Positions 6,686-63,216 of a stretch of DNA of 64,000 nucleotides are shown piece by piece. The notes below the pieces were generated by a model that saw nothing but the letters and a program-made list of their open reading frames with translations, did not search any database and was not told the DNA's origin. The stretch spans positions 298,019 through 362,018 of the IMG/VR virus record IMGVR_UViG_3300042502_001233, one strand, 5' to 3'. A program made the position numbers and the translations under genes. Every line of letters begins with the position of its first letter. The stretch's first letter is position 1.

Positions 6686-6784
6686 TGCGAGAGGATGGAT
6701 TCGAACCACCGACACCTAGTCCCTAGTTGTTCCCTTGTACTTCGGGCTAAAAACCTTAGCGTTTACCAACTTCGCCACTCTCGC
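6686..6784 (-). ncRNA. tRNA-like RNA with remodelled anticodon/variable region
   Basis: Acceptor GCGAGAG/CTCTCGC, Leu-type D arm, T arm GGTGG-TTCGAAT-CCATC; no canonical 7-nt anticodon loop. Confidence 0.6.
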
Positions 6785-7517: not shown

Positions 7518-7574
7518 TTTACTTCTTTCTAAATAAATATCTAGAAATTATAAAAAGTACAAAAAAGTTTAAGG

Positions 7575-7648
7575 TGGAAGTAACGGGACTCGAACCCGTG
7601 TTCTCGCAACATCAGCCGCTTTATACTATCCTATTGTACTATACTCCC
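7575..7648 (-). ncRNA. tRNA-like RNA with Ala-type acceptor (G3:U70) and 4-nt anticodon loop
   Basis: GGGAGTA/TACTTCC-A acceptor, D and T arms intact; central hairpin GCGGC-TGAT-GTTGC. Confidence 0.6.
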
Positions 7649-41725: not shown

Positions 41726-42742
41726 TTACTCGTTGTCGTTTTCGTTAAACCTTTTGTTTGCTAGTTTGATAGAAGCAGCTACTGTGTCTTCTAACGTGTT
41801 ATATATGTTAGCTTCGTAGTTCAATGTTTCTTCAAATACTTCACCCCACATGATGTCTAAGTAACTCATACGATAAGCATCATCTGGTCTACCATAAACC
41901 ATTTTTTGTGGTTCTCTACCTTGCCAATACCCAAATTCCATGTTGGTTGTCAACGCAATCAACTCTTTGGTTCTTGGAATCCAGAACATAATACAATCAG
42001 CGGCTTTTAAGCCATTGTATTCCCATCTAGGAACCCATGCTTTGTTTTGGTCAGATTCTGTCTTAGACGTGAACTCTGGTACTATTATATCACCATTGAA
42101 ACCTTGACGTTTAAACTCTTCTATAGCTTCATAACGCCATGATGTTAAATGTGGTTGGTGACCTCTAACCGTTGGACCAGCCAAAAATATTGATGGTTTT
42201 TCAATCAACCTGATAACTTCTTGAGGTGTATGATAACGGTGAACCGTTACATTGTGTTTGGTTAGAGCTTCTTTATCAAACTCATCTCTAACACGCATAA
42301 TAGCTTCACCTAACCAATTGGTACCTTTCCATTTTGTTTTGTCGTTGATGTCTGGGTGAGATTCATGCATCCCTATACCCCAAATAGTGTCTTCTGGACT
42401 GGCTTCAACAATTTCCAACTTGCCAGTTCTCATTAACTCTGATTTCATCACAGAATTTTGACTAAACTTAGCGTAATTAGCTTCATATACGATTTCACGA
42501 CATACAGCTTCCCATTTGTCTTTGTTAAAGTTTTTAACTTTGCGACCAATAGCTTTTTGCTCTTTAGGTCCCTTAGCCATCATAATTTCAGCCCATGATG
42601 TATAGTCTTTGAACAGTATGGCTTTTTTAGCCATCATGTATTGCTCAGCCGTTACATATTTTACTCCGTCAATTTCAAACTCACTAGGAGCCCACTGGGA
42701 AAACGTCCCACCCCAAAAGAATATGTATTTATCAGTTTTCAT
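41726..42742 (-). CDS. NADAR domain fused to a nucleoside 2-deoxyribosyltransferase-like domain
   Basis: FSQW, TAEQYMMAKKA, KFSQN, EASPEDTIWGIG, GTNWLG; IFLAGP, SWR, TTNMEFG. Confidence 0.9.
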   Translation of the reverse strand: MKTDKYIFFWGGTFSQWAPSEFEIDGVKYVTAEQYMMAKKAILFKDYTSWAEIMMAKGPKEQKAIGRKVKNFNKDKWEAVCREIVYEANYAKFSQNSVMKSELMRTGKLEIVEASPEDTIWGIGMHESHPDINDKTKWKGTNWLGEAIMRVRDEFDKEALTKHNVTVHRYHTPQEVIRLIEKPSIFLAGPTVRGHQPHLTSWRYEAIEEFKRQGFNGDIIVPEFTSKTESDQNKAWVPRWEYNGLKAADCIMFWIPRTKELIALTTNMEFGYWQGREPQKMVYGRPDDAYRMSYLDIMWGEVFEETLNYEANIYNTLEDTVAASIKLANKRFNENDNE

Positions 42743-42744
42743 AA

Positions 42745-43356
42745 TTAAACTAAATCTTTTGCATGTTGCATGCTTATTTTGTCATAGACACCTGAACAAA
42801 GGCTATAAACGTATAACCAAAGTCTTCTAAATGGGTTATTCAATAACGTTGCTACCAAAGATAGCGGCCAATATGAAATCCAAGCTATAATTGAAGATTT
42901 GTTATCAGTACCGTTAGGCATAATCTTAACAACAACATCTTTCATATTGTTAACATCACTACCGTATAACTTGAAACCAAACTGTCTTAAAAAATCACAT
43001 AACCCACGCAAGTGTATTTGGTCTTTTTCATCAAACTTTTTGTTTTGTTCTAAGTATTCTGCTCGTTTTGTTTTGAACAAATTGACTTTTTTCTTAACAA
43101 ATTCATTCCATTTAAGTATAGACCAACCCATACCTAATATAATATAACCTAGTGAAAAATAAATGGTTGTAGCGATGTTTGTCGATACAAAAGCCCATAA
43201 ATCTTTTCCATAGTTCCACAATAAAAGTGCCAACACAAATGATATTATACCACTTGCCCAACCTTCTTCTTCATTTTCTAGCGATACCATTACCGCTATT
43301 GCCCCTACAATACTAACTCCTAGTATAACGTAGATGTTACTTAAAAATTCTAACAT
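42745..43356 (-). CDS. membrane protein
   Basis: Several hydrophobic segments; IIAWISYWP. Confidence 0.75.
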   Translation of the reverse strand: MLEFLSNIYVILGVSIVGAIAVMVSLENEEEGWASGIISFVLALLLWNYGKDLWAFVSTNIATTIYFSLGYIILGMGWSILKWNEFVKKKVNLFKTKRAEYLEQNKKFDEKDQIHLRGLCDFLRQFGFKLYGSDVNNMKDVVVKIMPNGTDNKSSIIAWISYWPLSLVATLLNNPFRRLWLYVYSLCSGVYDKISMQHAKDLV

Positions 43357-43368
43357 AATTTCTTTTTT

Positions 43369-44496
43369 TTAGTTTGTTACTTTTGCTCTTTCTCTAATTT
43401 CTTCGAATGTGTATTCCACAAGGATTTCACCCATTCTAAACACTTCAACCAACTCGTCTTTAACAGTGTCAAAATCAGCATCCATTGATGTAACGGTTCT
43501 GTATGTACCATCATCATTTTTAACCAATTTAAGTTTACCTTGTTTTGATTTTTTAAATGATTTGGTGATGTTACCATCAGCGTCCATTTCAGTTGGTGAT
43601 TTAACCACGTTTCTTTCTTCTCCGTCAACTACGGCAAAGCATGCTTTCGTGGCAAAGTTCAAAGTATCTCGATTACAGTCTTGAAGTAATTTACCACCCA
43701 TACCCAACGCTAAATTCTCTGGAGATATTTTTTCATCTTCTAACATTGCGTAGATTTCTTTAATTGACTCCAAGTTAACACCGTCACCTTGGATAACACG
43801 AACTTGTGGTGGCAACACTTTGTAACCTTTATCGTTCACAGTGTATCCAAATTTATCGAACAATATGTGGAAAATTTCTCGTAATGAGTTGATTACGTGA
43901 CCAGAATCTGGACGGATTACAAGCTGATTTCCTGGCTCTGCTGGACGTGATAAGATAAGGTCTATAAGGTCTTGACCCCAATATTGTGCACACGCTCTGA
44001 AAATGTTGTAAGAGTCAGATACACATGCTACCAAACCAGTAGGGAACATAGTCAATACTCTTCTCATCATTTCTAACTCACCTTCTTCACCGTTAAGGGT
44101 CATGATAGAGTGTTCAGTAGCTGGAATAGACAATCCGTAGATAGTTTCTGTGTTGTAAAGGTCTCTAATCATTTTAGAAGCAATTACAGTATCAGAACCT
44201 TTGAAGTTAACCAAATGCGCTGAACCACCAATTTTAGCTGATTGTACACTTGATACACCACGGAAACCGAAGTCATTCAATACAAAATCCACAAGGAACT
44301 CTCGTAACGCTGGGTCGTAAGATGTACATTTTTGGAATGCGGCATCTACAATTTTTCTTACTTCTCTAGAAAGAGTAGCAACAGTGATTGGGTACCATAC
44401 TTGAAGCAAAATTGATTCTAAGAAGTTTGTCAACCAAGCACATTCTGGGTCGAGACTTTCAATCGTGAATAGCACGTTCTTGGTGTTTACAACGGA
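43369..44496 (-). CDS. nadV: nicotinamide phosphoribosyltransferase (NAMPT) family, exon 2
   Basis: SVVNTKNVLFTIE, DFGFRG, PATEHS, VSDSY, IRPDSG, IQGDG, SKQG. Confidence 0.93.
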   Translation of the reverse strand, partial: SVVNTKNVLFTIESLDPECAWLTNFLESILLQVWYPITVATLSREVRKIVDAAFQKCTSYDPALREFLVDFVLNDFGFRGVSSVQSAKIGGSAHLVNFKGSDTVIASKMIRDLYNTETIYGLSIPATEHSIMTLNGEEGELEMMRRVLTMFPTGLVACVSDSYNIFRACAQYWGQDLIDLILSRPAEPGNQLVIRPDSGHVINSLREIFHILFDKFGYTVNDKGYKVLPPQVRVIQGDGVNLESIKEIYAMLEDEKISPENLALGMGGKLLQDCNRDTLNFATKACFAVVDGEERNVVKSPTEMDADGNITKSFKKSKQGKLKLVKNDDGTYRTVTSMDADFDTVKDELVEVFRMGEILVEYTFEEIRERAKVTN

Positions 44497-45466
44497 CGTT
44501 TATATTCCACTCAACTCGCAACAGTTGAATGCGTTCTCTAAGGAACTGCTTTATCTCTCGATAAAGACTAGACTATATCAAAACCCTATTTACTAGGGTC
44601 AAAACCATTTCCAGAACCATTAGCTTGTTCTGTACTCCCTTGCGGGATAGTCGTTGAACGTTTTTCTAAATTTAAGTATATTTTATTAACAAGGTTTAAA
44701 AAATCATCATGGTCTAAACACATTTTAGCTCTATTACATGTTTCACAACAAGTAACAACATTTTCGTTGGTGTATCCAATTTCATTATTCAATCTATCAA
44801 TTCCGTTTCTTTTAAACTCTAAACCACTTCGATTATATCTTTCCTCACCTTTATTTACTTTTGGTTCCTCACCGCAATAATAACAATTTGAAAAAATTAA
44901 TTCTTTTACCTTTTCATCGGTAAGTAAGAATTCATAACCTCTATTTTTTGCACCACTTTTATATTGTTTTAAAACTCTACTAAGTAATGCGCCATTTTCT
45001 GGTTTTATTCTAGTTTTGGAAATTTCTTTGATTGAACATTGTTTACATTGTGTTCTTTTTCCATTATTTAATTCATTTGGTCTTACTTTTGCTTCTCCAC
45101 CACATTCACACTCACAAACCCAAAGGTATTGTTCATATTTTTTAGTTTCATCTAAAATGTAATCTTTAGCAATTAACTTACCAAACTTCTCACCAGTTAA
45201 ATCTTTAAACAATGGTGATTCTTTTCCTTTTTTATACTCTCTCATAATTAATGCGTTTATTAATAAATATCACGAACTTTTAAAAACGCACTAATAAAAT
45301 GAAAATAAATTTAGAAACTTCGCTGCTGATTTCCCAATCCTATATCTTTTCAAACATTCACGCTTAATATTACTATTTACGTTGTAGTGTTATAGGCTCT
45401 AAGGGGTTCCCAGCAATTAGATTTCTTTAGACATACTATTACTAGTATGAATGGCTACTTTTGTTA
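44497..45466 (-). mobile_element. group I intron in NAMPT, carrying an HNH-type endonuclease ORF
   Basis: 5' splice site after GGU with P1 partner GUAGCC; core P AATTGCTGGGAA, Q AATCAGCAG, R TTCAACGACTA, S GATATAGTCT; terminal G at 44497; splicing restores AVPEG|SVV in frame. Confidence 0.93.
44586..45245 (-). CDS. intron-encoded HNH/His-Cys-type endonuclease
   Basis: DLTGEKFGKL, WVCECECG, CYYCG, NGIDRLNN..GY...NVVTCCETCN. Confidence 0.88.
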   Translation of the reverse strand: MREYKKGKESPLFKDLTGEKFGKLIAKDYILDETKKYEQYLWVCECECGGEAKVRPNELNNGKRTQCKQCSIKEISKTRIKPENGALLSRVLKQYKSGAKNRGYEFLLTDEKVKELIFSNCYYCGEEPKVNKGEERYNRSGLEFKRNGIDRLNNEIGYTNENVVTCCETCNRAKMCLDHDDFLNLVNKIYLNLEKRSTTIPQGSTEQANGSGNGFDPSK

Positions 45467-45901
45467 ACCCTCTGGAACCGCTTTGATACTTATTGGTAGT
45501 TTACCATCGTATTTATCAACGATATAGTCAAATTTGCTTCTATCGAAGACATCATCACGACCAAAGACACCTAACTTGGTACCTAAGTATTCGTAAGCTT
45601 CATCAACTTCTTCTTTAACGATTGCAATACCTTCAAGGTATTGTTTAAGGATAATTTGTAGACCGTAGAACAATGTGGTATCAAATTTACCACCTCTAGA
45701 TTCCAAATAAGAAATCATTTTGGTCATTTCAACACCGTAGAATCTGTGGTGTGAATATTTGTAAGCGTCGCTACACAAGATAAGGTTATCTGGTTTAACA
45801 AGCACTTTTGATAATACTTTTTGGATTGATTTAATATCATCCAAATCAGCGTTGGCTAACGCTCTCTCTAGTCGTCTGACTAAATTTCTTTGTATGCTCA
45901 T
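45467..45901 (-). CDS. nadV: NAMPT family, exon 1 (spliced product about 520 aa)
   Basis: SDAYKYSH, YLESRGG, FYGLQ, LPISIKAVPEG. Confidence 0.93.
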
Positions 45902-45959
45902 AATTTTTAAACATTTAGTTGTGCAAATATACTACTATTTTATTATATCTGCAATTATT

Positions 45960-47465
45960 TTAGTAATTTTTTAGTTTGCCATTTTCGTCTCTGTGCATGA
46001 TGTGCTCAGACGTTAATTGAGTAACATCTGTCAAGCCCATAGCGCCCAATACTTCTCTCACTTCATGTATCACAGCTTTATGGTAGTTATACACACGTAC
46101 TTTCTTTTCTGCTGGGTTTAACGCGCCAATAAGTGTTTTGTTTTGCGTGGCAATTCCAACTGGACAAGTGTTCATGTTGCACTCTCTAGCTTGAATACAC
46201 CCAAGACTTAACATAAATGCTCTAGCTGCGTTCACAGTATCAGCACCCATAGCCAATAGTTTGATAATATCGAATGAAGTACTAGCTTTACCTGATGCAA
46301 TTACTTTAATATCATCTTTTAACCCAGCTTTATTCAAGTTATGGTTAACAATTTTCAAAGCATCCATAAGGGGCATACCAATACTGTTAGTGAACACCAA
46401 AGGAGCCGCACCAGTACCACCCTCACCACCATCAACAGTTATAAAGTCTGGGTAGTTTTTGTTTTCTTTCATCGTTTGACATAACTCTTGGAACTCCAAA
46501 TCATCACCAATACATAATTTAATGCCGATTGGTAATCCACCAGACAACTTTCTAAGTTTAGCCACGAACTTTAATAACCCAACAGAATCAGAAAATGCTG
46601 AATGATATGGTGGACTCATCACATCTATATTGGCCTCAACACCACGTATAGCGGCTATTTCAGGTGTGTTTTTAGAAGCTGGTAAAATTCCACCATGACC
46701 AGGTTTTGCCCCTTGAGACAACTTGATTTCAATCATCTTGATGTTCCCACTTTTCAAAGTTTTTACAAATTCCATATCAGAAAAATGACGTTTACCAGCT
46801 ATGGTTTTACCCGCACCAAAATAACCAGTACCTATTTGGAAACACAAATCACCACCATTCTCTGTATGATATGGACTTACACCACCTTCACCAGTGTTGT
46901 GATAAAAGTTACCCAACTTAGCACCACCATTTAACGAACGCACAGCAGCATTTGACAACGCACCGTAGCTCATAGCACTAATGTTAAGAATACTTGCAGA
47001 ATAAGGTTTCTTGCAGAATTTTGAACCAATGGTAACACGAGGTTCTTTAACTAGTGACAAATCTTTTGGGTACATCGAATGTTTCAGAAATTCATATCCT
47101 TTTGCATATACATCATCTTGTGTACCAAATGGTGTCGTGTTAACCTCACCTTTGGATTTTTGGTACACGTCAGAACGTTTTTCACGATTATAAGGTGTTC
47201 CGTTAGTGTTATCCTCGATAAAATATTGTTGAATTTTTGAACGCTCGTGTTCAAACACCCATCTAAGTCTACCGATTAGAGGATAATTTCTTAACAACGC
47301 ATGTTTGGTTTGGTTGATGTCTTTAATAACTGTAACTAAACAAACCACACTGGTCAAAGCCAATAGTGTTAACAATAGACTAGGAAACAACGAAGCAAAT
47401 AACGTAAGAATTATTGCCAAGCATGTAAATATCAATAAAATTTTGTCTCTAGTTAAATTACTCAT
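45960..47465 (-). CDS. FMN-binding glutamate synthase family protein
   Basis: SAMSYGALS, NTGEGG, EIKLSQGAKPGHGG, VDGGEGGTGAAP, GCIQARECNMNTCPVGIATQ. Confidence 0.93.
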   Translation of the reverse strand: MSNLTRDKILLIFTCLAIILTLFASLFPSLLLTLLALTSVVCLVTVIKDINQTKHALLRNYPLIGRLRWVFEHERSKIQQYFIEDNTNGTPYNREKRSDVYQKSKGEVNTTPFGTQDDVYAKGYEFLKHSMYPKDLSLVKEPRVTIGSKFCKKPYSASILNISAMSYGALSNAAVRSLNGGAKLGNFYHNTGEGGVSPYHTENGGDLCFQIGTGYFGAGKTIAGKRHFSDMEFVKTLKSGNIKMIEIKLSQGAKPGHGGILPASKNTPEIAAIRGVEANIDVMSPPYHSAFSDSVGLLKFVAKLRKLSGGLPIGIKLCIGDDLEFQELCQTMKENKNYPDFITVDGGEGGTGAAPLVFTNSIGMPLMDALKIVNHNLNKAGLKDDIKVIASGKASTSFDIIKLLAMGADTVNAARAFMLSLGCIQARECNMNTCPVGIATQNKTLIGALNPAEKKVRVYNYHKAVIHEVREVLGAMGLTDVTQLTSEHIMHRDENGKLKNY

Positions 47466-47467
47466 GA

Positions 47468-48466
47468 TTATTTTAATGTAATTAAGTTTTCTTCTACTAC
47501 TTTTTTGATGAATGTTTCCATCAATTTAATGTGTTCTGGGACAATTTTATCCTCTATATCGAACATATAGTTTTTATTCTGGGTGTGACCACTACCTTGA
47601 CTTGGGTCTGTTATCACACTAAACAAATCTTTGATGTTAAACCATTTTACTTCCGCGATATCGTCAGAAGCTTCTGGTCTACCCATTTGGTCCCAAGCGT
47701 GTGTCATGAACAAAGTTGTCATAATACCGTTTTCTTCTCTAGCATAACGCCAATCTTCTACAGCTTGACTGCACACATAATGCATTTTCAACGCAGATAG
47801 TTTTGTTTCTTCGTAAAGTTCTCTACGAGCAGCCATTTCCCAATTTTCATCAGTACGGTCAACAAACCCACCAACAAATCTAAAAAGCGTTTCAGATGGT
47901 TTTCTAGCCAATAGGATTTTATCACCATCAACAACCACAACATCAACTGTTGGGTATGTTACTGGTCTTTGTCTGTGAATACCATAGATAACACCACTTC
48001 TAAATTCATCTGAATCCAACGGTGTATTAGCAGCTTCTGCTCTAAGGTCAGTAGCGTTGTGTGAATCGACTTGTGGGTATTCTTCTGTAGAATGATTTCC
48101 ATGATAATGAGGAATGAATGAATCGCGACTACCATATAATACCGCATCGGTTTCTGGGAACATACTTCTAATAGCGTTGTCAATCTGTGTTGACCATTTA
48201 TGGTCACTTCTGTTGTCGTCTAACGGCAATAAAATGACATTTGGATAAACGTTTTGAACCATTTTACATCTGGTTGCAAAATCCAAAGGATTTCTTTTTG
48301 AGTTTTGTATTCTAGGGATACCTAAAAACACAACAACATTTCTATGGTTTTCAGTTACATAGTCCAACAGACCTGTGTGACCTTCATGTAATTCAGGTGT
48401 TTGGAATCTTCCAATAACTACACCTACAGTGTTTAAATTTTTCATTTTCTTGATTTTATGTTGCAA
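47468..48466 (-). CDS. nadM: bifunctional NMN adenylyltransferase / Nudix ADP-ribose pyrophosphatase
   Basis: IGRFQ..LHEGH, NPL, NATDLR; GGFVD...AARRELYEET, ASDDIAEVKW. Confidence 0.9.
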   Translation of the reverse strand: MQHKIKKMKNLNTVGVVIGRFQTPELHEGHTGLLDYVTENHRNVVVFLGIPRIQNSKRNPLDFATRCKMVQNVYPNVILLPLDDNRSDHKWSTQIDNAIRSMFPETDAVLYGSRDSFIPHYHGNHSTEEYPQVDSHNATDLRAEAANTPLDSDEFRSGVIYGIHRQRPVTYPTVDVVVVDGDKILLARKPSETLFRFVGGFVDRTDENWEMAARRELYEETKLSALKMHYVCSQAVEDWRYAREENGIMTTLFMTHAWDQMGRPEASDDIAEVKWFNIKDLFSVITDPSQGSGHTQNKNYMFDIEDKIVPEHIKLMETFIKKVVEENLITLK

Positions 48467-54237: not shown

Positions 54238-54263
54238 AAAAGAGGGGTATCACCCCTCTTTTT
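54238..54263. terminator. bidirectional intrinsic terminator
   Basis: AAAAGAGGGG-TATCA-CCCCTCTTTT between convergent genes. Confidence 0.85.
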
Positions 54264-55744
54264 TAATATGTAAATTTATGCCAAGTATCATAATTTTTAT
54301 CTAAAGCATCCATAGCCAGTTCAACTTCTTTTAAACATTCGTTGATACCACCACCAACTAGCACCACGTTGTTATAAGAACCCAAAAAGTCCATTAAGTC
54401 TGGAATATTAATACAATCCTCAGAATCTTCCATCAATTCTCTGATGTTTTTAGAACCGTATTGTTTAACAAATGCTTTCCAGAATTTTTTATCCAATTCT
54501 CTAGAATCGTTTATATCGTTATCTCGCATAAACTTAACCAGATTTACCAATTCTTCATCATCCCCACCACGGTCCATACAGTTTCTAAAGAACGCGTAAC
54601 CTTTGTCGTATAATCTAGCACCATAAGCTATATCTTCATCCAACCCGTTTTCTACCAACCAATCTCTATATTCATGTTCTGAAACCATACCCATAGTGTC
54701 TTCACCATTGTATAAAAACGTTAAATCAGATAATTCGTGTATATGCGTGTTGATGTATTCGAATAATTCAGTTTGTATACCACCCATCCATGAAGCGTAT
54801 TCTGGTTGAACGTCAACAACTATCAAATGTCTACCGACAGCATTTTCCGTTATCAAAGGCGTATCTTCATTGATTTCACCACTAGACAATTTTTTGTTGT
54901 GTTCAATAACTCTATCTAATATTTGATGATAAGCTTGAGATAACCTTCTCATAAGTCTTTTTTTGAAGTTTGGTGTCATTTTCTCATAGGCACCAAAGTT
55001 ATTCTCAAATTGAGTTTTAATACTACTAAAAGGAACTGGTGTTAAAAAACCATTAGGTTTGTTTTTATCCATTCCGTTGTTAGTAATATAGAACTGAATT
55101 TCTTTTATAGCTTGGGTAAACCTAGCGTTAATTTCGTATTCAAGTTTATCGTAGTCATCGCGTTGTTTTTGTGTGATAGGTGTACCTTTTGGTAAGTTAC
55201 CGTATTCTTTGTCGTAGTCATAACCTCTTTTGCTGGCCATGAACATACCTTGACTTCTCCAAGAGTCATAAGCATGTTGTAATTCGTGTAAAATTGTTGA
55301 TAGAACTTTTCTATCATACAAACGACCATGTACTTGGTTGCACATCTGGTTGTATATTTCTTGGTTGATTTGTTTACCTGATTTTAATATAGGGAAAACT
55401 ATATCTTCTATGGATTTTTGTAGTTTAGACAATTCATACCTAACAATGATATCACCACTAATTTCATTATGTGCGACAAAATCACCCAAAGAACTCAAAC
55501 TACCACTATATCTAAAACCTAAATCATATTCGTTGACAAAATCACTTAAATTTAAGTATTTGTTTCTGTTTATTTTGCTAAACATATCTTGAATTCTATC
55601 AAGGATATTTAATGTAGATTTTTTATCAATCGTTTCACTTACAAAATACCTAATACTAGTCATAAATACACTATCAGCCAAATTTTGCAATTCGACGTGT
55701 GTATTCATATCTTCTCTAAGTAGATGTTTGATTAACCTTTTCAT
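54263..55744 (-). CDS. two-domain protein: HExxH metallopeptidase-like plus cysteine-hydrolase (isochorismatase/nicotinamidase)-like
   Basis: ILHELQHAYD...EINAR; LIVVDVQ...DKGY...LVGGGINECL. Confidence 0.65.
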   Translation of the reverse strand: MKRLIKHLLREDMNTHVELQNLADSVFMTSIRYFVSETIDKKSTLNILDRIQDMFSKINRNKYLNLSDFVNEYDLGFRYSGSLSSLGDFVAHNEISGDIIVRYELSKLQKSIEDIVFPILKSGKQINQEIYNQMCNQVHGRLYDRKVLSTILHELQHAYDSWRSQGMFMASKRGYDYDKEYGNLPKGTPITQKQRDDYDKLEYEINARFTQAIKEIQFYITNNGMDKNKPNGFLTPVPFSSIKTQFENNFGAYEKMTPNFKKRLMRRLSQAYHQILDRVIEHNKKLSSGEINEDTPLITENAVGRHLIVVDVQPEYASWMGGIQTELFEYINTHIHELSDLTFLYNGEDTMGMVSEHEYRDWLVENGLDEDIAYGARLYDKGYAFFRNCMDRGGDDEELVNLVKFMRDNDINDSRELDKKFWKAFVKQYGSKNIRELMEDSEDCINIPDLMDFLGSYNNVVLVGGGINECLKEVELAMDALDKNYDTWHKFTY

Positions 55745-56333: not shown

Positions 56334-56407
56334 TGCAGTAGACGAGACTCGAACTCGCAACCCTTGACTTGGCAAGCCAATACTCTAACCAATTGAGCTA
56401 CTACTGC
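56334..56407 (-). tRNA. tRNA-Gly(GCC)
   Basis: Full cloverleaf; TTGGC-TTGCCAA-GTCAA. Confidence 0.93.
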
Positions 56408-56546
56408 ATTTATGCCTCTCTCTGCATCCGTCACACCCCATTTGTATTCTGTTAATCTCCTAAGACTGTTTGCTACGCTTGACATAAAGTCTCAGCCCTT
56501 AAAAGGATTTTCCTAACGGTAAATCGGTGTCAAAAACCAGTATTTC

Positions 56547-57359
56547 TTAATACCACCACCATTTAGCTTGGTTTCTGTTTTGGTAATGAAACTCTTGGAA
56601 GTCTTGACTCCAAGCGCTAGCACTGGTCCAATCAGTCCAATCACTATCGGTGATAAACTCTCTTTCAGTCATTTCGTTACCTTGTTCTTTGTGCCACTCA
56701 TGAGAGTCGTTAATGAACATGGTGTTGAGGTTCTTTCTAAGAGCCATTTTGTCTTTGCGTCTGTTTCTTTTTGAGACACTTTTTAAGAACCAAGAATAAC
56801 CACCCTCATTGTAAGGATTCATAATAGTTCTAAGATGCCAAAGTTGGTCTCTTACAAATCTTAATTCTCGTTCTAACTCACCATCAACCACTTTACGGTG
56901 AGTGATGTAACTGTTTCTGATTTTCATAACAAAATAAAAATCTGGAACGTAAGACGCTGAGTAATATTTAGCTATAGTACCGTTCCAACGTGGTTTATCA
57001 TCTAAATGATTGTGTCGGAAATACTTTGCCACTTGTGGCGGCAATTTTAAATATTGTTCCTCAGACATTAATTTTATCTTAGGTTTTCTATCAATCACAT
57101 AACCTCTCTTTTTTTCGTAGAACACAGTCGTTGGAGACCATGTTAACGTAGAGCAATTATCAATGATGTATTGGAATACCCAAGCATCTTGTCTTCTAGA
57201 AATGTCTTCTCTTAATTCCAAATAAGCTTCATAGCCTTTGTGTATTGGTTTTTCAAGTTCAACATAACCTAAATTTTTGATGGCCATTTCAAGCTCATCT
57301 TCTTTTTCCATTAACGCTAAATAGCGTTTGTAATCTTTGTGTTTTGTGTTTTTACTCAT
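56547..57359 (-). CDS. hypothetical protein within tRNA cluster
   Basis: 270-aa ORF. Confidence 0.75.
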   Translation of the reverse strand: MSKNTKHKDYKRYLALMEKEDELEMAIKNLGYVELEKPIHKGYEAYLELREDISRRQDAWVFQYIIDNCSTLTWSPTTVFYEKKRGYVIDRKPKIKLMSEEQYLKLPPQVAKYFRHNHLDDKPRWNGTIAKYYSASYVPDFYFVMKIRNSYITHRKVVDGELERELRFVRDQLWHLRTIMNPYNEGGYSWFLKSVSKRNRRKDKMALRKNLNTMFINDSHEWHKEQGNEMTEREFITDSDWTDWTSASAWSQDFQEFHYQNRNQAKWWWY

Positions 57360-57488
57360 TTGTTCTCGGTATAGGGATTTGACCCTTAGTACCTCGAACC
57401 TTTTAAAATTGCAATCATAGTTTTCCTTTTTTATTAATTAGTATTTTATTAGAGTACAAATATACGAACTCTTTTTATAAATAGCAAG

Positions 57489-57758
57489 TTATTTGTTATA
57501 ATTTTTTAAATTATGTTCTACACACATAACCGCTTCTGCGATAGCCACTTTGGCATCTTCAACGTCTTTTGCCCAAGTAACCACACCCAAATTAGGTATC
57601 GTTACCTTGATGAAACCGTCTGGTCTTCTTTCAATGACGCTATTTCTGGTATCTTCTACCAACTTCTCAATTCTTTCTCTGTGCTTTCTAGAGCGTTCTG
57701 CTAACCTAGCTTTACTTTCCTCTGAAAGCTTTCCACCTAAGTATACAAAACTTTCCAT
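57489..57758 (-). CDS. hypothetical protein with HicB-like C-terminal segment
   Basis: VTIPNLGVVTWAKDVEDAKVAIAEAV. Confidence 0.55.
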   Translation of the reverse strand: MESFVYLGGKLSEESKARLAERSRKHRERIEKLVEDTRNSVIERRPDGFIKVTIPNLGVVTWAKDVEDAKVAIAEAVMCVEHNLKNYNK

Positions 57759-57773
57759 AATTAATATTTTTAG

Positions 57774-57853
57774 AGCCGATGGAGGGACTCGAACCCCCGA
57801 TGTTTGTATACCGCTTTACAAAAGCGGTGCTGTCGCCACTGAGCCACATCGGC
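57774..57853 (-). tRNA. tRNA-Thr(TGT), enlarged variable loop
   Basis: GCCGATG acceptor; CCGCT-TTTGTAA-AGCGG. Confidence 0.85.
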
Positions 57854-57956
57854 ATTTAATAGCTATCAAATCGTGGATATCATTGATTTGAAATAAACTT
57901 ATTATCCTTTCTGCAAGGAATGACAACCATCTCTGAAGTTTACTTATCACTATTTG

Positions 57957-58030
57957 AGCCTCAGACAGGAGTCGAACCTGCGACCTGCTGATTACAAATC
58001 AGCTGCTCTGGCCATCTGAGCTACTGAGGC
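57957..58030 (-). tRNA. tRNA-Thr(TGT)
   Basis: GCTGA-TTTGTAA-TCAGC. Confidence 0.95.
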
Positions 58031-58038
58031 ATATATTG

Positions 58039-58122
58039 TGGGCAAGGAGGGATTCGAACCCCCGAAGTCGAATGACAGATGTTTTACAGACACCGCGCTT
58101 TGAGCCGCTTGCATACTTACCC
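58039..58122 (-). tRNA. tRNA-Tyr(GTA)
   Basis: GGTGT-CTGTAAA-ACATC, long variable arm. Confidence 0.93.
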
Positions 58123-58186
58123 ATAACGGCCTATAACGTTTGCCACTCGATGGGTATTTCTTTCTCGCAGTACCATTTCTGCCGTG

Positions 58187-58265
58187 TGGGCCTAGAGGGA
58201 ATCGAACCTACAAGAATTAACACGATTTTACAGACCGCTGAGCTCACCACCTGCTCAATAGACCC
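58187..58265 (-). tRNA. tRNA-Tyr(GTA), imperfect T stem
   Basis: GCGGT-CTGTAAA-ATCGT. Confidence 0.75.
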
Positions 58266-58271
58266 AATTTC

Positions 58272-58330
58272 AGGGTGGTGTATCGGTTTCAAATTAAAAG
58301 TTTGATGATAAAGATTGCTGAAACCACCCT
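58272..58330 (-). ncRNA. mini RNA: CAGCAA stem carrying an isolated Lys(TTT) anticodon stem-loop
   Basis: AGGGTGG-TTTCAGCAA...TCAAA-CTTTTAA-TTTGA...CCACCCT. Confidence 0.6.
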
Positions 58331-58334
58331 TTAG

Positions 58335-58406
58335 TTGGAATGTAGGGACTCGAACCCTAAAAATGACGGTCAAAGTGTCATATGTTGCCAATTACATCAC
58401 ATTCCA
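58335..58406 (-). tRNA. tRNA-Gln(TTG)
   Basis: TGGAATG acceptor; loop CTTTGAC. Confidence 0.85.
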
Positions 58407-58417
58407 GTATAATATTG

Positions 58418-58488
58418 TTGTCCTACAAGGATTCGAACCTTGAATGACTGGCTCAAAACCAGTAGTGTTACCGTTACACTATAGGACA
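58418..58488 (-). tRNA. tRNA-Gln(TTG)
   Basis: ACTGG-TTTTGAG-CCAGT. Confidence 0.92.
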
Positions 58489-58661
58489 ATAACTCTAATT
58501 CTATGCTCGTCCTCACGCAACTCTATAAATTAGTAACAGTCTTATCTACAACGTCAGTAGGACTTAAAAGGAACCACTCATTTATATCCTTTCTATCAAC
58601 GGGGAATCACTCCCATGCTTGGCGTAATCCATACATCACTGCATGTCTATCCTACTTATTG

Positions 58662-58735
58662 AGCGATTATTCGGATTCGAACCGAAACCAGAGACTTGGA
58701 AGGCCCCTGTGCTAGCCGTTAAACACCATAATCGC
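58662..58735 (-). tRNA. tRNA-Gly(TCC)
   Basis: GGGGC-CTTCCAA-GTCTC. Confidence 0.92.
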
Positions 58736-58786
58736 AATTTTCTAATTTATTTATTTCATCTAAAACATAGTTTATATATTATTTTG

Positions 58787-58859
58787 TGCTCCCGAAGGGC
58801 CTCGAACCCTTTACCCCTCCGTTAAAAGCGGAGTGCCCGTCCACATGAGCTTCGAAAGC
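58787..58859 (-). tRNA. tRNA-Lys(TTT)
   Basis: CTCCG-CTTTTAA-CGGAG. Confidence 0.85.
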
Positions 58860-58883
58860 AATTATCCATTTCTGGATTTTTAG

Positions 58884-58957
58884 TACCCCCGAAGAGACTC
58901 GAACTCTTGACTCCCCGCTTAAAAGGCGGGTGCTCTAACCAACTGAGCTACGAGGGT
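58884..58957 (-). tRNA. tRNA-Lys(TTT)
   Basis: CCCGC-CTTTTAA-GCGGG. Confidence 0.95.
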
Positions 58958-59045
58958 ATATTACACTCATAACCAATTGGTCTGAGTGACTTAACGTTTA
59001 CGCTTTATGTTCTTTATATTTTTCATTTGTTTTATTGTTGTTTTT

Positions 59046-59121
59046 GGCCTCCCAGAAGGATTCGAACCTTCCATCCATAAGCCCCCAATGGGCTGCGCTT
59101 TTCCTACTAAGCTATGGGACG
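59046..59121 (-). tRNA. atypical tRNA/pseudo-tRNA, anticodon ambiguous (TGG or TTG)
   Basis: D and T arms intact; AGCCC-ATTGG-GGGCT anticodon arm is non-canonical. Confidence 0.5.
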
Positions 59122-59127
59122 CATATT

Positions 59128-59475
59128 TTATTTTTGTCTTTCTTTTAATTCTTCAACCGTTAAATTATAACGATGTAATATTCTATGATGATTCGCACAA
59201 AGGCAAACACATTTTTCAATTTCATTTATAATTTTAACATTAGACCATTTATGGTTACATACAGCGGCTATTGTAAATTCTTTATCATCTTTGTCTATGT
59301 GATGAAAATCTATACAAGCTTTATCCGCTTCCCCACAAACTAAACAAGGTTTTTTTAAGGTTTCTACTAAATCTCTAATTTCTTGTCTTCTTTGTCTTTG
59401 TTTTAAATTATGAATTTCTTTATTGTTTTTAAATTCATTTTGTTTCCATTCTTTTTGTTTTTCTGTCTGTGCCAT
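59128..59475 (-). CDS. small HNH endonuclease
   Basis: CLVCG...DFHH...KCVCLCANHHR. Confidence 0.88.
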   Translation of the reverse strand: MAQTEKQKEWKQNEFKNNKEIHNLKQRQRRQEIRDLVETLKKPCLVCGEADKACIDFHHIDKDDKEFTIAAVCNHKWSNVKIINEIEKCVCLCANHHRILHRYNLTVEELKERQK

Positions 59476-59598
59476 ATTTTCTTTTTATTATAAATATGTT
59501 CAAGTCATACAAAAAGACTAGAATTTATCAAATTATTAGCCATTATTTTCATAATGTTTCCAGTAACCGCTGCGTGGAAGCTATTTGATATGGTTACT

Positions 59599-59687
59599 TC
59601 TAAGTGATGGGACTCGAACCCACATGATGCTTTTTACACAATTCTCGTTTCCAAAACGAGTCGGCTTCCAATTGCCTTCACACCTAG
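59599..59687 (-). tRNA. tRNA-Pro(TGG) with long variable arm
   Basis: CTAGGTG/CACTTAG acceptor; CTCGT-TTTGGAA-ACGAG; T arm GTGGG-TTCGAGT-CCCAT. Confidence 0.7.
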
Positions 59688-61872: not shown

Positions 61873-62214
61873 ATGACAAAGGTACAAATAAAAAATGACA
61901 CTACCAAATGATAATGCCATTTTTTTTGAAGGAAGCACTGCTTTACGGTAAATTACCAACCTAATTTTTGGGTCGACTGGAGTTAACAATCGGACTGTCC
62001 ACCAGCTTATTTTTTATAAAACAAGCAAAAACCTAGAAGAACAGTGACTCAAGGGAATACTCATACCTCGGCTCTAGAAACCTTTCATTTAGTTTCGCCC
62101 CCTGTATAGATAGTTTATACTCTATCAGATACCCGTGGTCAGCCACAGCTCTTTTTCTACATATCCCAATTGTGGGAAAGGGAGCCACCTCTAAACTACT
62201 TGAGTTTGTTCTCG

Positions 62215-62400
62215 TATGGTGAGTAGGATTCGAACCTACTAGGTAAGGGTTCCTTCATTGGCTGTTAAGCACCTTCATGAGGCTCAGTTTCGCCACCCTC
62301 TGCACAAACCACGACTTACTTTCCCATTTACCTTAACTGATGTTGAGACGTGCGTTCGTTTACCTTATTGTCTTTTAGCGTTCCCAGACGCATTCACCAT
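62215..62400 (-). ncRNA. expanded tRNA-like RNA (about 185 nt)
   Basis: ATGGTGA/TCACCAT closing stem next to T arm GTAGG-TTCGAAT-CCTAC. Confidence 0.45.
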
Positions 62401-62411
62401 ATGTGAGTGAC

Positions 62412-62538
62412 AAGATTGCGTTTTAATAGTGCTACCCATTACACCACACGCCCAACACCTCTATTAGGACATGCTGGGACTCGAACCCAGACCTTCTCGA
62501 TTTCAAAGCGAATTGTACAAATTTGCTGAAACAATCTT
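62412..62538 (-). ncRNA. circularly permuted tRNA-like RNA with CAGCAA stem (Y-RNA-like)
   Basis: AAGATTG-TTTCAGCAA, anticodon arm, T arm, CATGTCC-loop-GGGCGTG, D arm, CAATCTT. Confidence 0.75.
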
Positions 62539-62731
62539 TTTTCACTCTATTAAGGCTAGAGGAACCTTTTATTTTTGGCTTTCACCATAATGTCATGATA
62601 ATGTTGGAAAACCCATCCTTCTTCCAATCCTTGGTGCTTCTTAAGTTTTACGTAGCCACGGCACGGGTGTTACACTGCGAGTCCGCTGTTGAAATTGTCG
62701 ACATCTCAACAGTAAGTGTCATTATCATTAG

Positions 62732-62846
62732 TACAAGAGATTGGATTCGAACCAATGCCACTCCCACGTCTCGCATCCAATCTAAAAGGGAATCGAACCC
62801 TACGCACGGTTACAGGGGGAGTGCTCTTCCGCTAAGCTACTCTTAT
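62732..62846 (-). ncRNA. tRNA-like RNA with about 45-nt insert, including a second T arm, in the anticodon loop
   Basis: ATAAGAG/CTCTTGT acceptor, D arm, ACTCCC/GGGAGT stem, insert AGGG-TTCGATT-CCCT. Confidence 0.6.
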
Positions 62847-62998
62847 ATTTGAGGCTGAGGCCTCTGTGTTGTAGTGACTACAAAGTCTATCCACTCTTCT
62901 ACCTACATCTCTACTACCACTCCGATATAGGGTGGGATGGTTCGGTCTCCTTATTTAGCATTCCTTTCTCAAGGGAACAACACAATATTTTAGACAAC

Positions 62999-63126
62999 AA
63001 GATTACTTTTTTTCTTTTACGTGCTCTAACCAACTGAGCTACCGACCCACTAGGAGCCGAGTGGGACTCGAACCCACGACCACGAGCTTAACAGGCTATA
63101 GATAGTTTTGTTGCTGAAATAATCTT
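62999..63126 (-). ncRNA. circularly permuted tRNA-Asn(GTT)-like RNA with CAGCAA stem (Y-RNA-like)
   Basis: AAGATTA-TTTCAGCAA, AGC-CTGTTAA-GCT, T arm, TCGGCTC-CTAGT-GGGTCGG, GCTC-AGTTGGTTA-GAGC, TAATCTT. Confidence 0.8.
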
Positions 63127-63216
63127 TCTATGTCTAGTAATAACTCACGCAATTTCTCACGTGAATTATCGACCCCTTTTGTTATACTCTTGAGGGCACT
63201 CTGAGTTAGTTGGTGA

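What the first reader, a model, noticed from the sequence alone, without database searches (positions are those of the whole stretch)
62412..63126. Circularly permuted tRNA-like RNAs clamped by a CAGCAA stem (Y-RNA-like)
Seen: two elements (62999-63126, Asn-GTT loop; 62412-62538, loop probably TGA) in which the anticodon arm, T arm and acceptor 3' strand come BEFORE the acceptor 5' strand and D arm. The acceptor is closed by a loop, and the ends pair as AAGATT(A/G)/(T/C)AATCTT followed by TTTCAGCAA. Known: bacterial YrlA Y RNAs have this T-acceptor-D order with a Ro60-binding terminal stem, but lack the anticodon arm. Inference: a Y-RNA-like class that retains anticodon loops, acting as a decoy/bait for anticodon nucleases or an RNA-repair scaffold, or permuted genes matured by ligation.
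Basis: partly seen in the sequence, partly recalled or inferred. Interest (0 to 1): 0.82.

Follow-up and report, generated by a model that had tools for sequence, protein, structure and literature searches.

The report
Phage Y-RNA-like permuted tRNA mimics
The two elements are real, circularly permuted tRNA look-alikes belonging to a large, uncatalogued family of phage small RNAs that sit beside a distant relative of the Ro60 RNA-binding protein, so they are most likely Y-RNA-type partners of that protein rather than tRNA genes.

Summary
On the minus strand, 63126-62999 and 62538-62412 each read: 7-bp clamp strand, UUUCAGCAA, anticodon-like hairpin, variable loop, T arm, acceptor stem closed by a loop, D arm, A-rich linker, second clamp strand. 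Joined the other way round in silico, ARAGORN calls them tRNA-Asn(GUU) and tRNA-Ser(UGA).

They are not isolated. A covariance model finds 142 copies in 80 viral loci: 94.5% of pair cells are paired and 27 of 28 pairs show compensatory changes. The constant core is the clamp plus CAGCAA. The anticodon triplet and the acceptor stem are the most variable parts.

The commonest neighbour, always on the same strand, is a DUF2828/DUF7788 protein whose predicted fold matches full-length Ro60. Starting from that protein, 64 of 64 viral RNA hits and 35 of 35 bacterial hits lie on its strand. Salmonella phage FelixO1 and a mycobacteriophage carry the pair.

Rfam YrlA matches only below threshold (41 and 21 bits against 69), and the GNCGAA motif is replaced by CAGCAA.

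Best reading: a new variant of Y RNA (YrlA-like tRNA mimic). No Ro-like gene lies in this 64-kb window. Binding, RNA ends and function are untested. Maturation into real tRNAs is unlikely.

The parts
62999..63126 (-). Element 1 (type A): whole permuted tRNA-like Y-type RNA; un-permuted it reads as tRNA-Asn(GUU)
   Evidence: (85.4 bits)
63120..63126 (-). El.1 clamp, 5' strand AAGAUUA (pairs with 62999-63005)
   Evidence: 7 bp, every pair shows compensatory changes in the family
63111..63119 (-). El.1 conserved unpaired motif UUUCAGCAA (core CAGCAA); proposed Ro-like contact site
63083..63097 (-). El.1 anticodon-like arm: AGC / CUGUUAA / GCU plus C42 G43, which pair with C27 G28 at 63021-63020
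63061..63077 (-). El.1 T arm GUGGG UUCGAGU CCCAC
63042..63060 (-). El.1 acceptor stem (UCGGCUC / GGGUCGG) closed by loop CUAGU
63023..63039 (-). El.1 D arm GCUC AGUUGGUUA GAGC (G15 pairs with C48 of the variable loop)
62999..63005 (-). El.1 clamp, 3' strand UAAUCUU, followed by conserved G 62998
63134..63138 (-). El.1 leader ACUAG, complementary to the acceptor-closing loop CUAGU (63049-63053); tentative pseudoknot
   Evidence: weak because CUAG is a palindrome
62412..62538 (-). Element 2 (type B): whole permuted tRNA-like Y-type RNA; un-permuted it reads as tRNA-Ser(UGA)
   Evidence: (90.6 bits); a 118-nt RNA-library contig covers 62409-62526
62532..62538 (-). El.2 clamp, 5' strand AAGAUUG (pairs with 62412-62418, CAAUCUU)
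62523..62531 (-). El.2 motif UUUCAGCAA
62496..62512 (-). El.2 anticodon-like arm UUCGC / UUUGAAA / UCGAG (C-U mismatch at the loop-closing pair)
62474..62490 (-). El.2 T arm CUGGG UUCGAGU CCCAG
62447..62473 (-). El.2 acceptor stem (CAUGUCC / GGGCGUG) closed by the 13-nt loop UAAUAGAGGUGUU
62429..62444 (-). El.2 D arm (A15 pairs with U48)
62557..62562 (-). El.2 leader CCUCUA, complementary to UAGAGG in the acceptor-closing loop (62458-62463). It covaries in relatives (CCUCUG/CAGAGG, CCUCUU/AAGAGG). It can also form a local hairpin with UAGAG 62549-62545.

Best explanation
The two elements are non-coding Y-RNA-type tRNA mimics, not tRNA genes. Each RNA has two modules.

Module 1 is constant. It is a 7-bp clamp formed by the two ends, with the conserved outer pairs A-(G/A)-G / C-(C/U)-U followed by G, and an unpaired CAGCAA directly 3' of the 5' strand. 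This occupies the place of the Ro60-contact motif GNCGAA of YrlA. I infer that it is the docking site for a divergent Ro60-like ring protein (Pfam DUF2828 + DUF7788/vWA).

Module 2 is a complete L-shaped tRNA body: D arm, T arm, the U8-A14 and 15:48 tertiary pairs, and a 4-5-nt variable loop. Its acceptor end is sealed by a loop, so it cannot be charged. It still displays a canonical anticodon loop.

Shown here: the fold (covariation), the family, and the same-strand linkage to the Ro-like gene.

Inferred: the Ro-like protein binds module 1, and module 2 presents a tRNA-shaped surface to tRNA-handling factors during infection. Those factors could be host anticodon nucleases, repair kinase/phosphatase/ligase enzymes, or 3'-5' exoribonucleases. 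The rapidly changing anticodon triplet and acceptor stem would set which tRNA species is imitated.
For: Fold:
- RNAalifold recovers the clamp, T arm, acceptor stem and D arm; 19 of 23 pairs have compensatory changes.
- On 142 copies, 94.5% of pair cells are paired against 60% after shuffling and 41-49% after sliding; 27 of 28 pairs have double changes.
- The Levitt pair 15:48 is G:C or A:U in 95 of 137 copies against 53+-5 shuffled. U8 is present in 134 of 137 and A14 in 133 of 137.
- Un-permuted copies are called tRNA by ARAGORN in 98 of 142 cases, against 1 of 142 in native order.

Constant module:
- CAGCAA is present in about 126 of 142 copies, including copies found by the model and not by the text pattern.
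- It is present in 52 of 64 copies found by starting from the protein.
- Short 92-95-nt variants keep the clamp, CAGCAA, the anticodon arm and the T arm but lack the acceptor stem and D arm. They lie 10-68 nt before the Ro-like start codon.

Partner protein:
- It is the commonest neighbour in RNA-ascertained loci: 27 of 81 loci, always on the same strand. Pfam gives DUF2828 at E 6e-47 plus DUF7788.
- Its AlphaFold model (pLDDT 81) matches full-length Ro60 structures best: 9kop at E 7e-9, 9l5y and 9nep at about 1e-6.
- Protein-first test: 64 of 64 RNA hits lie on the gene's strand in 39 of 80 viral loci, and 35 of 35 in bacterial or MAG loci.
- Control: 2 hits in 921 kb of unrelated viral DNA.
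- FelixO1 has a 74-bit hit about 1 kb after ORF42. Mycobacteriophage Wyatt2 has a 65-bit hit 110 nt after its 'Ro-like RNA binding protein' gene.

Kinship with YrlA:
- YrlA is the only Rfam family that matches (41.2 bits, E 9e-7).

Variable identity parts:
- 19 copies whose bodies are at least 85% identical carry 8 different triplets.
- Per-site diversity is 0.37/0.73/0.41 at positions 34-36 and 0.44 in the acceptor stem, against 0.17-0.31 in the linkers and below 0.1 in nearly every other region (variable loop 0.22).
- In 44 loci with two or more copies, no two copies share a triplet.

Other recurrent neighbours are a DSP-type phosphatase, a Metallophos phosphoesterase and an AAA_33 kinase.
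Against: - No Ro-like, TROVE or DUF2828 gene lies in the 64-kb window (tblastn; Pfam). None lies within about 5 kb of any relative of the window's own subclass (clamp AAGAUUA/G).
- The window appears to end with its contig about 0.9 kb upstream of El.1, so the rest of the roughly 362-kb genome is unseen.
- No binding data exist for any member.
- The Ro60-contact motif of known Y RNAs (GNCGAA/CGAA) is absent.
- The RNA evidence is only assembled contigs from metatranscriptomes. They also cover the flanks, so DNA carry-over or read-through cannot be excluded.
- High diversity at the triplet could be relaxed constraint rather than selection.
- Acceptor stems do not imitate co-located phage tRNAs with the same anticodon.
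Confidence: 0.7

Rival explanations
1. Ro-independent decoys. The sealed tRNA mimics act alone as baits or competitive inhibitors for host anticodon nucleases or other tRNA-targeting defences. The clamp and CAGCAA serve only for stability or processing.
For: - The anticodon loop is canonical, and the triplet and acceptor stem are hypervariable.
- Copies within one phage never share a triplet.
- The elements lie inside tRNA arrays.
- In the window's own subclass, no Ro-like gene lies nearby.
Against: - The most conserved part of the family is the clamp and CAGCAA, not the tRNA body. Short variants drop the acceptor stem and D arm but keep the clamp and CAGCAA.
- The same-strand linkage to the Ro-like gene is strict: 64 of 64 and 35 of 35.
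Confidence: 0.15
2. Circularly permuted tRNA genes. The transcript is cut at both ends, the ends are ligated (for example by RtcB or a phage RNA ligase), the acceptor loop is opened by RNase P and a 3' nuclease, CCA is added, and a working tRNA results.
For: - 98 of 142 copies become ARAGORN-callable tRNAs when un-permuted.
- Some family members carry NCCA directly after the acceptor 3' strand (listing).
- Phage RNA ligase and kinase/phosphatase genes recur nearby.
- Permuted tRNA genes exist in algae (PMC4090602).
Against: - There is no bulge-helix-bulge geometry: a 7-bp helix is separated from the tRNA body by 14-22 unpaired nucleotides (definition in PMC4090602).
- The break point differs between copies (26/27 against 28/29).
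- No sequence is conserved at the would-be cut sites.
- Near-identical bodies carry the triplets GAA, GUA, GGA, GCA, ACG, UAG, AUG and GCG, although bacterial tRNA-Tyr and tRNA-Ser need a long variable arm (the last point is my own knowledge).
- Short variants lack the acceptor stem and D arm altogether.
- No backward joint was seen in RNA contigs (weak evidence).
- Both window elements lack CCA.
Confidence: 0.07
3. Processing punctuation. The tRNA-shaped spacers serve only as RNase P/RNase Z entry sites or folding insulators for the long tRNA-array transcript.
For: - The elements lie at the head of, or inside, tRNA arrays and directly after a well-conserved upstream gene.
- M. smegmatis YrlA is a substrate of RNase P (PMC4201824).
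Against: This does not explain the conserved CAGCAA and clamp, the linkage to the Ro-like gene where no tRNA array is present (Wyatt2), or the hypervariable triplet.
Confidence: 0.06
4. Decayed remains of tandem tRNA genes (3' half of one, 5' half of the next) with no function.
For: - Adjacent tRNA pairs give weak hits to both the YrlA model and my model (23-33 bits).
- A blastn hit in phage PAU spans two neighbouring tRNA-Met genes.
Against: - Acceptor pairing is 7/7 within each element.
- The clamp covaries.
- 142 copies show 94.5% of pair cells paired.
- The scores of 85-91 bits are far above those of tandem tRNAs.
Confidence: 0.02

Closest known systems
YrlA, the bacterial and phage Y RNA with a tRNA-like domain (Rfam RF02553; Chen et al. 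2014, PMC4201824)
   Same: - The two ends pair in a terminal stem with a conserved unpaired motif near the 5' end.
- The order is T arm, acceptor stem closed by a loop, D arm.
- The Levitt pair 15:48 covaries.
- An optional hairpin lies before the T arm.
- The RNA is encoded beside, and on the same strand as, a Ro60-type ring protein.
- YrlA is the only Rfam family that matches.
   Different: - Scores are 41 and 21 bits in the window, and 30-39 bits or nothing in relatives, against a gathering score of 69.
- The motif is CAGCAA, not GNCGAAN0-1G.
- The hairpin before the T arm is a canonical anticodon arm (7-nt loop, U33, A37, A38, followed by a 4-5-nt variable loop) with a hypervariable triplet.
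- The partner protein belongs to Pfam DUF2828/DUF7788, not TROVE.
- The RNA often occurs in 2-5 copies inside tRNA arrays.
Yrl1/Yrl2 of Thermus phage phiLo with phiRo60 (PMC12135203; PDB 9kop, 9l5y)
   Same: - Phage-encoded Ro60 has Y-like RNAs just upstream on the same strand.
- A 5'-3' stem flanks an internal loop that holds the protein-contact motif.
- phiRo60 is the best structural match of the DUF2828 protein model.
   Different: The phiLo RNAs carry CGAA and, as described, no tRNA-like domain. Protein sequence similarity is near nil (profile E 0.14).
Circularly permuted tRNA genes of Cyanidioschyzon merolae and other algae (Soma et al. 2007; reviewed in PMC4090602)
   Same: - The 3' half lies upstream of the 5' half.
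- The natural 5' and 3' ends are bridged by a short loop.
- The leader and trailer pair with each other.
   Different: - There the leader and trailer form a bulge-helix-bulge site cut by the splicing endonuclease, giving a circular intermediate and a working tRNA.
- Here there is no such geometry, no fixed break point, no match between body and anticodon, and a bacterial-virus setting without that enzyme.
Two-piece (permuted) tmRNA
   Same: The T arm and acceptor 3' strand are encoded before the acceptor 5' strand.
   Different: There is no tag reading frame and there are no pseudoknots. The element is only about 125 nt long. ARAGORN finds no tmRNA, and Rfam tmRNA gives only a 9.9-bit fragment.

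Membership tests
YrlA / bacterial Y RNA (RF02553) | tRNA-like domain in the order T arm, closed acceptor stem, D arm, with tRNA tertiary pairs | tested here: met
YrlA / bacterial Y RNA (RF02553) | 5' and 3' ends pair in a terminal stem | tested here: met
   7 bp; all 7 pairs show compensatory changes
YrlA / bacterial Y RNA (RF02553) | GNCGAAN0-1G (CGAA) motif near the 5' end, the presumed Ro60 contact (PMC4201824) | tested here: not met
   CAGCAA stands in the equivalent place
YrlA / bacterial Y RNA (RF02553) | Score at or above the Rfam gathering threshold (69 bits) | tested here: not met
   41.2 and 21.3 bits in the window; 30.8-39.3 bits or no hit in relatives, FelixO1 and Wyatt2
YrlA / bacterial Y RNA (RF02553) | Encoded within about 4 kb of a Ro60 gene and on the same strand | tested here: inconclusive
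   Family level: met, with a Ro60-like DUF2828 protein. This window: no such gene in 64 kb, and the contig ends 0.9 kb upstream.
YrlA / bacterial Y RNA (RF02553) | Bound by Ro60/Rsr; carries tRNA-type modifications | not testable with these tools
   needs RIP, EMSA and modification mapping
Circularly permuted tRNA gene (algal type) | 3' half upstream of 5' half, natural ends bridged by a loop | tested here: met
Circularly permuted tRNA gene (algal type) | Leader and trailer form a bulge-helix-bulge splice site (4-bp helix flanked by 3-nt bulges; PMC4090602) | tested here: not met
   a 7-bp helix lies 14 nt (3' side) and 22 nt (5' side) from the tRNA body; there are no 3-nt bulges
Circularly permuted tRNA gene (algal type) | A re-joined or circular RNA and a mature tRNA exist | tested here: inconclusive
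   no backward joint among contigs of 4 RNA libraries, but contigs drop rare forms
Circularly permuted tRNA gene (algal type) | Anticodon consistent with the body's identity features | tested here: not met
   8 triplets on bodies at least 85% identical, including Tyr and Ser triplets without a long variable arm
tRNA (RF00005) | Cloverleaf in native 5'-3' order | tested here: not met
   ARAGORN finds none; Rfam gives a 17.9-bit partial hit against a threshold of 29
tmRNA (permuted, two-piece) | Tag reading frame, pseudoknots, model match | tested here: not met
Ro60/TROVE protein (for the partner, DUF2828 + DUF7788) | HEAT-repeat ring plus vWA domain | tested here: met
   Foldseek matches full-length Ro60 structures at E 7e-9 to 2e-6 and TM about 0.5; all other hits cover vWA only. 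Sequence-level similarity to TROVE is not significant.

The most novel reading that the evidence does not exclude
The family is a set of identity-programmable tRNA mimics. A constant Ro-like docking module carries a sealed tRNA body. Its two identity parts, the anticodon triplet and the acceptor stem, are kept under diversifying selection, and each phage holds several non-redundant versions. Each copy would then bait, titrate or report on one host tRNA-specific nuclease or defence sensor. Alternatively, it would steer the Ro-like ring and the repair or decay enzymes to one damaged tRNA species. That would be an RNA-level counter-defence repertoire evolving like a receptor-binding gene.
Probability: 0.25. 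Interest if true: 0.85.

Novelty: new variant of a known kind. Interest (0 to 1): 0.64.

Why it matters
Ro60 and Y RNAs are conserved from bacteria to humans, but what the tRNA-like half of bacterial Y RNAs does is still open.

This family links a Ro60-like protein class that is annotated only as 'DUF2828', 'RNA-binding protein' or 'Ro-like' to a defined RNA partner. That protein class occurs in 709 deposited phage genomes and at least 550 viral contigs.

The pair is present in tractable phages: FelixO1 and a mycobacteriophage. A weaker RNA hit (55 bits) lies in Vibrio phage D483. Listeria phages carry the protein, but the RNA was not searched for there.

The parts of the mimic that evolve fastest are the ones that define tRNA identity. 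This turns 'why mimic a tRNA?' into experiments that can be done with existing phage-host pairs and known anticodon nucleases.

It also marks a class of RNA genes that current tRNA finders and Rfam thresholds miss or mislabel.

Tried and rejected
- tRNA or tmRNA gene: ARAGORN and Rfam do not call the elements in native order.
- Known self-cleaving ribozyme in the flanks or in the CAGCAA module: no Rfam ribozyme hit at E<=10 in 61.8-63.2 kb. The CUGAU...CGAAAC strings near 62.1 kb do not fit the hammerhead core (by eye).
- Outer stem GCAACA/UGUUGU proposed by the YrlA alignment for El.1: absent in El.2 and in relatives. The AAGAUUR/YAAUCUU clamp is the conserved helix.
- A general pseudoknot between the leader and the acceptor-closing loop: only a modest excess overall (mean 4.06 against 3.65 nt; 43 cases of 5 nt or more against about 21 expected). 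It is real only in subclasses.
- Mimicry of the phage's own tRNAs: acceptor identity to a co-located tRNA with the same anticodon is 2.09 of 7, against 2.01 for other tRNAs. Triplets are no more often matched by co-located tRNAs than by chance (22 against 27.5+-3.7).
- The 493-aa ORF after the tRNA array (54263-55744) as a hidden Ro-like gene: hhalign probability 0.2%, and the Atlas search gives nothing.
- The window proteins that were scanned (20 ORFs, mostly the larger ones and those near the RNA cluster) show no TROVE, vWA or RtcB domain.
- Supplementary phage list of Chen et al. 2014: not held. The 2020 Annual Review: not held.
- A literature search for DUF2828 or for a description of this RNA found nothing relevant.
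- The very high depth (1305) over El.1 in run X17 was not used as evidence. It sums tRNA-like contigs from other organisms.
Full report
**Observation**

Both elements lie on the minus strand at exactly the coordinates given. Read 5' to 3', El.1 (63126-62999) is:
- AAGAUUA, then UUUCAGCAA, then a 13-nt linker
- a small hairpin, AGC / CUGUUAA / GCU
- CG, then UGGUC
- the T arm GUGGG UUCGAGU CCCAC
- UCGGCUC, the loop CUAGU, then GGGUCGG
- UA, then the D arm GCUC AGUUGGUUA GAGC
- A CG, then a 14-nt A-rich linker
- UAAUCUU, then G

In tRNA numbering every position from 1 to 28 and from 29 to 73 is present. C27 G28 pairs with C42 G43 and stacks on the 3-bp hairpin to complete a 5-bp anticodon stem. 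The variable loop U44-C48, U8, A14, G15:C48, G18 G19 and the T loop are all canonical. The chain is therefore broken between positions 28 and 29 and sealed between 73 and 1.

El.2 (62538-62412) has the same plan with these differences:
- The clamp is AAGAUUG/CAAUCUU, a compensatory change relative to El.1.
- The 5-bp anticodon stem has one C-U mismatch, the loop is UUUGAAA, and the break is at 26/27.
- The Levitt pair is A15:U48.
- The acceptor stem has 7 pairs and is closed by 13 nt.

ARAGORN and the Rfam tRNA model miss both elements in native order. Joined the other way round in silico, ARAGORN calls them Asn(GUU) and Ser(UGA). The 16-nt motif occurs exactly twice in the window. The only correction is that CAGCAA is an unpaired motif next to the clamp, not part of it.

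**A large family**

About 90 distinct copies have a 7-bp clamp that changes completely between lineages while staying complementary. Examples are AGGUUCU/AGAACCU, AAGACGA/UCGUCUU, AGGAUGC/GCAUCCU and AGUAUAG/CUAUACU.

- RNAalifold on 67 sequences recovers the clamp, T arm, acceptor stem and D arm, with compensatory changes in 19 of 23 pairs.
- A covariance model (R1) finds 142 copies in 80 sources, often 2-5 per locus.
- On that alignment 94.5% of pair cells are paired, against 60% after shuffling and 41-49% after sliding the partners. 27 of 28 pairs show double changes.
- The alignment is fitted to the model, but the margin is far beyond that bias.
- The tertiary Levitt pair covaries too: 95 of 137 against 53+-5.
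- In 921 kb of unrelated viral DNA the model gives 2 hits.
- In the window it gives only the two elements above 33 bits.

**What is constant and what varies**

Copies found by the model rather than by the text pattern show that the invariant core of the motif is CAGCAA.

The hairpin before the T arm has a 7-nt loop in 100 of 142 copies. Position 33 is U in 87%, position 37 is A in 84% and position 38 is A in 88%. Positions 34-36 carry 33 different triplets. It is an anticodon arm in shape and spacing.

Among 19 copies whose bodies are at least 85% identical there are 8 triplets (GAA, GUA, GGA, AUG, UAG, GCA, ACG, GCG). Per-site diversity is highest at position 35 (0.73), then in the acceptor stem (0.44). 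It is lower in the unconstrained linkers (0.17-0.31) and below 0.1 in nearly every other region; the variable loop is 0.22. In 44 loci with several copies, no two copies share a triplet.

The acceptor stems do not copy those of co-located phage tRNAs.

A leader segment pairs with the acceptor-closing loop in some subclasses. This includes El.2's subclass, where CCUCUA/UAGAGG covaries with CCUCUG/CAGAGG and CCUCUU/AAGAGG. It is not general.

**The partner**

I clustered the ORFs around the RNA-ascertained loci. The commonest neighbour is a 470-496-aa protein, present in 27 of 81 loci and always on the RNA's strand.
- Pfam calls it DUF2828 + DUF7788 with a weak vWA match. PHROGs calls it 'RNA-binding protein'.
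- Its AlphaFold model (pLDDT 81, pTM 0.80) matches full-length Ro60 structures best: phage phiLo Ro60 9kop/9l5y and the Ro60/pre-5S rRNA complex 9nep, at E 7e-9 to 2e-6. Everything else matches the vWA domain only.

Starting from the protein instead:
- 80 of at least 550 viral loci gave 64 RNA hits in 39 loci. All 64 lie on the gene's strand and 49 lie upstream.
- 80 bacterial or MAG loci gave 35 hits, all on the gene's strand.

The protein is present in 709 deposited phage genomes.
- In FelixO1 it is ORF42, directly before the tRNA array. A 74-bit RNA lies in an unannotated gap of that array.
- In mycobacteriophage Wyatt2 a 65-bit RNA follows the 'Ro-like RNA binding protein' gene by about 110 nt.

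Other recurrent neighbours are a DSP-type phosphatase, a Metallophos phosphoesterase and an AAA_33 kinase. These are typical RNA-end-healing enzymes, a point I take from my own knowledge and from PMC7824862.

**Relation to what is known**

Y RNAs with a tRNA-like domain (YrlA) next to Ro60 genes have been known in bacteria and 22 phages since 2014 (PMC4201824). A phage Ro60 with two Y-like RNAs has been studied structurally (PMC12135203).

The present RNAs share the architecture, and YrlA is the only Rfam family they hit. They differ in four ways:
- Every member tested stays below the gathering score.
- The GNCGAA/CGAA contact motif is replaced by CAGCAA.
- The hairpin before the T arm is a full anticodon arm. 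It is treated as an insertion by the YrlA model and described as an optional 'V' stem-loop by Chen et al.
- The partner belongs to a different Pfam family.

I found no paper or Rfam entry describing this RNA. I could not see the 2014 supplementary phage list. Some mycobacteriophage members may therefore already have been listed there as YrlA-like.

**This window**

The phage comes from lake or waste water and has 32% G+C. It carries a long minus-strand RNA-gene region (63.1-56.3 kb) behind a conserved 210-aa gene of unknown function. That gene precedes type A/B pairs in at least 7 loci.

No Ro-like, TROVE or RtcB gene was found among the ORFs scanned in the 64 kb. The contig seems to end 0.9 kb upstream of El.1. 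An RNase II/R gene lies at 12696-14687. This is of possible relevance, because bacterial Ro60/Y RNA works with 3'-5' exoribonucleases (PMC4201824).

Contigs from four metatranscriptomes cover both elements and their flanks. One 118-nt contig is nearly coextensive with El.2. No backward joint was seen. This shows presence in RNA libraries, not ends or processing.

**Mechanism**

Shown: a conserved, covarying fold made of a clamp/CAGCAA module and a sealed, L-shaped tRNA body with an exposed anticodon loop, and tight same-strand linkage to a Ro60-like gene across viruses and bacteria.

Inferred: the Ro-like ring docks on the clamp/CAGCAA module, as Ro60 does on the 5' strand motif of Y RNAs. The tRNA body then engages tRNA-handling factors.

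More speculative: the variable triplet and acceptor stem tune which tRNA is imitated, in the conflict over tRNA cleavage and repair.

The permuted-gene rival is disfavoured by the following:
- the lack of a bulge-helix-bulge site (definition in PMC4090602)
- the shifting break point
- the mismatch between body and triplet
- the short variants that lack the acceptor stem and D arm
- the primacy of the non-tRNA module in conservation

**Verdict**

This is a real feature and a member of a large family not captured by Rfam. It is best filed as a new variant of the Y RNA (YrlA-like) kind, paired with a divergent Ro60 clade. Function is untested.

Noticed in passing
window 59527-59598 (-), next to tRNA-Pro 59599-59687 (-): A sub-threshold HDV-like ribozyme hit (RF02682, 32.3 bits against 44, E 0.003) starts directly 3' of a tRNA. 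This is the layout of the theta ribozymes that trim tRNA 3' ends in phages (PMC10879173).
   Followed up: no
window 62732-62846 (-): A tRNA (Rfam 47.2 bits) has a 49-nt insert in the anticodon loop, and the insert contains its own T-arm-like hairpin. ARAGORN misses it. Relatives have a similarly long tRNA right after their Y-like RNAs (L146 1673-1790, L074 366-491).
   Followed up: partly
window 62213-62396 (-): tRNA-like ends (acceptor 5' strand, D arm ... T arm, acceptor 3' strand) enclose about 140 nt. No tool calls it as tRNA, tmRNA or intron.
   Followed up: no
window 62087-62193: A 107-nt non-coding stretch is 89% identical to the 462-kb uncultured phage LR756500.1. It is probably another conserved small RNA.
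   Followed up: no
window 62851-62985 (-): The sequence starting AUAUUGUGUUGUUCC recurs after the Y-like elements in L031 and L081. It folds with a long-range stem (z -1.9).
   Followed up: no
window 62545-62562 (-) and 62458-62463 (-): The leader CCUCUA can pair either with a local UAGAG (hairpin) or with UAGAGG in the acceptor-closing loop of El.2. All three segments covary in relatives, so this may be an alternative-pairing switch.
   Followed up: partly
window 56334-59687 (-), 6686-6784 (-), 7573-7648 (-): The tRNA array holds doubled or tripled isoacceptors (Thr x2, Tyr x2, Gln x3, Lys x2), several of unusual length. There is also a 99-nt Rfam tRNA hit that ARAGORN misses, and a tRNA with a 2-nt 'anticodon'.
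   Followed up: no
window 12696-14687 (-), 29495-31777 (-), 41726-48466 (-): The phage encodes an RNase II/R exoribonuclease, a Cas3-like HD helicase, an NAD-salvage set (NADAR, NAPRTase, Nudix) and a glutamate-synthase-domain protein.
   Followed up: no
L184 3326-3789: A GOLLD RNA (215.7 bits, above threshold) lies in the same tRNA/Y-like RNA cluster of a related viral contig.
   Followed up: no
L308 (Vibrio phage D483) 1356-1478, 1492-1611, 3521-3630: Three features annotated as 'tRNA' are 110-123 nt long and lie at the head of the tRNA array, after an RNA ligase gene. One region overlaps a 55-bit hit of the Y-like RNA model, so these are probably mislabelled members.
   Followed up: partly
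several family members, e.g. L198 3269-3390, L123 4578-4706, L215 820-946: In some copies the acceptor 3' strand is followed by (A/G)CCA inside the closing loop, as in a tRNA gene with encoded CCA. The window's two copies lack this.
   Followed up: no
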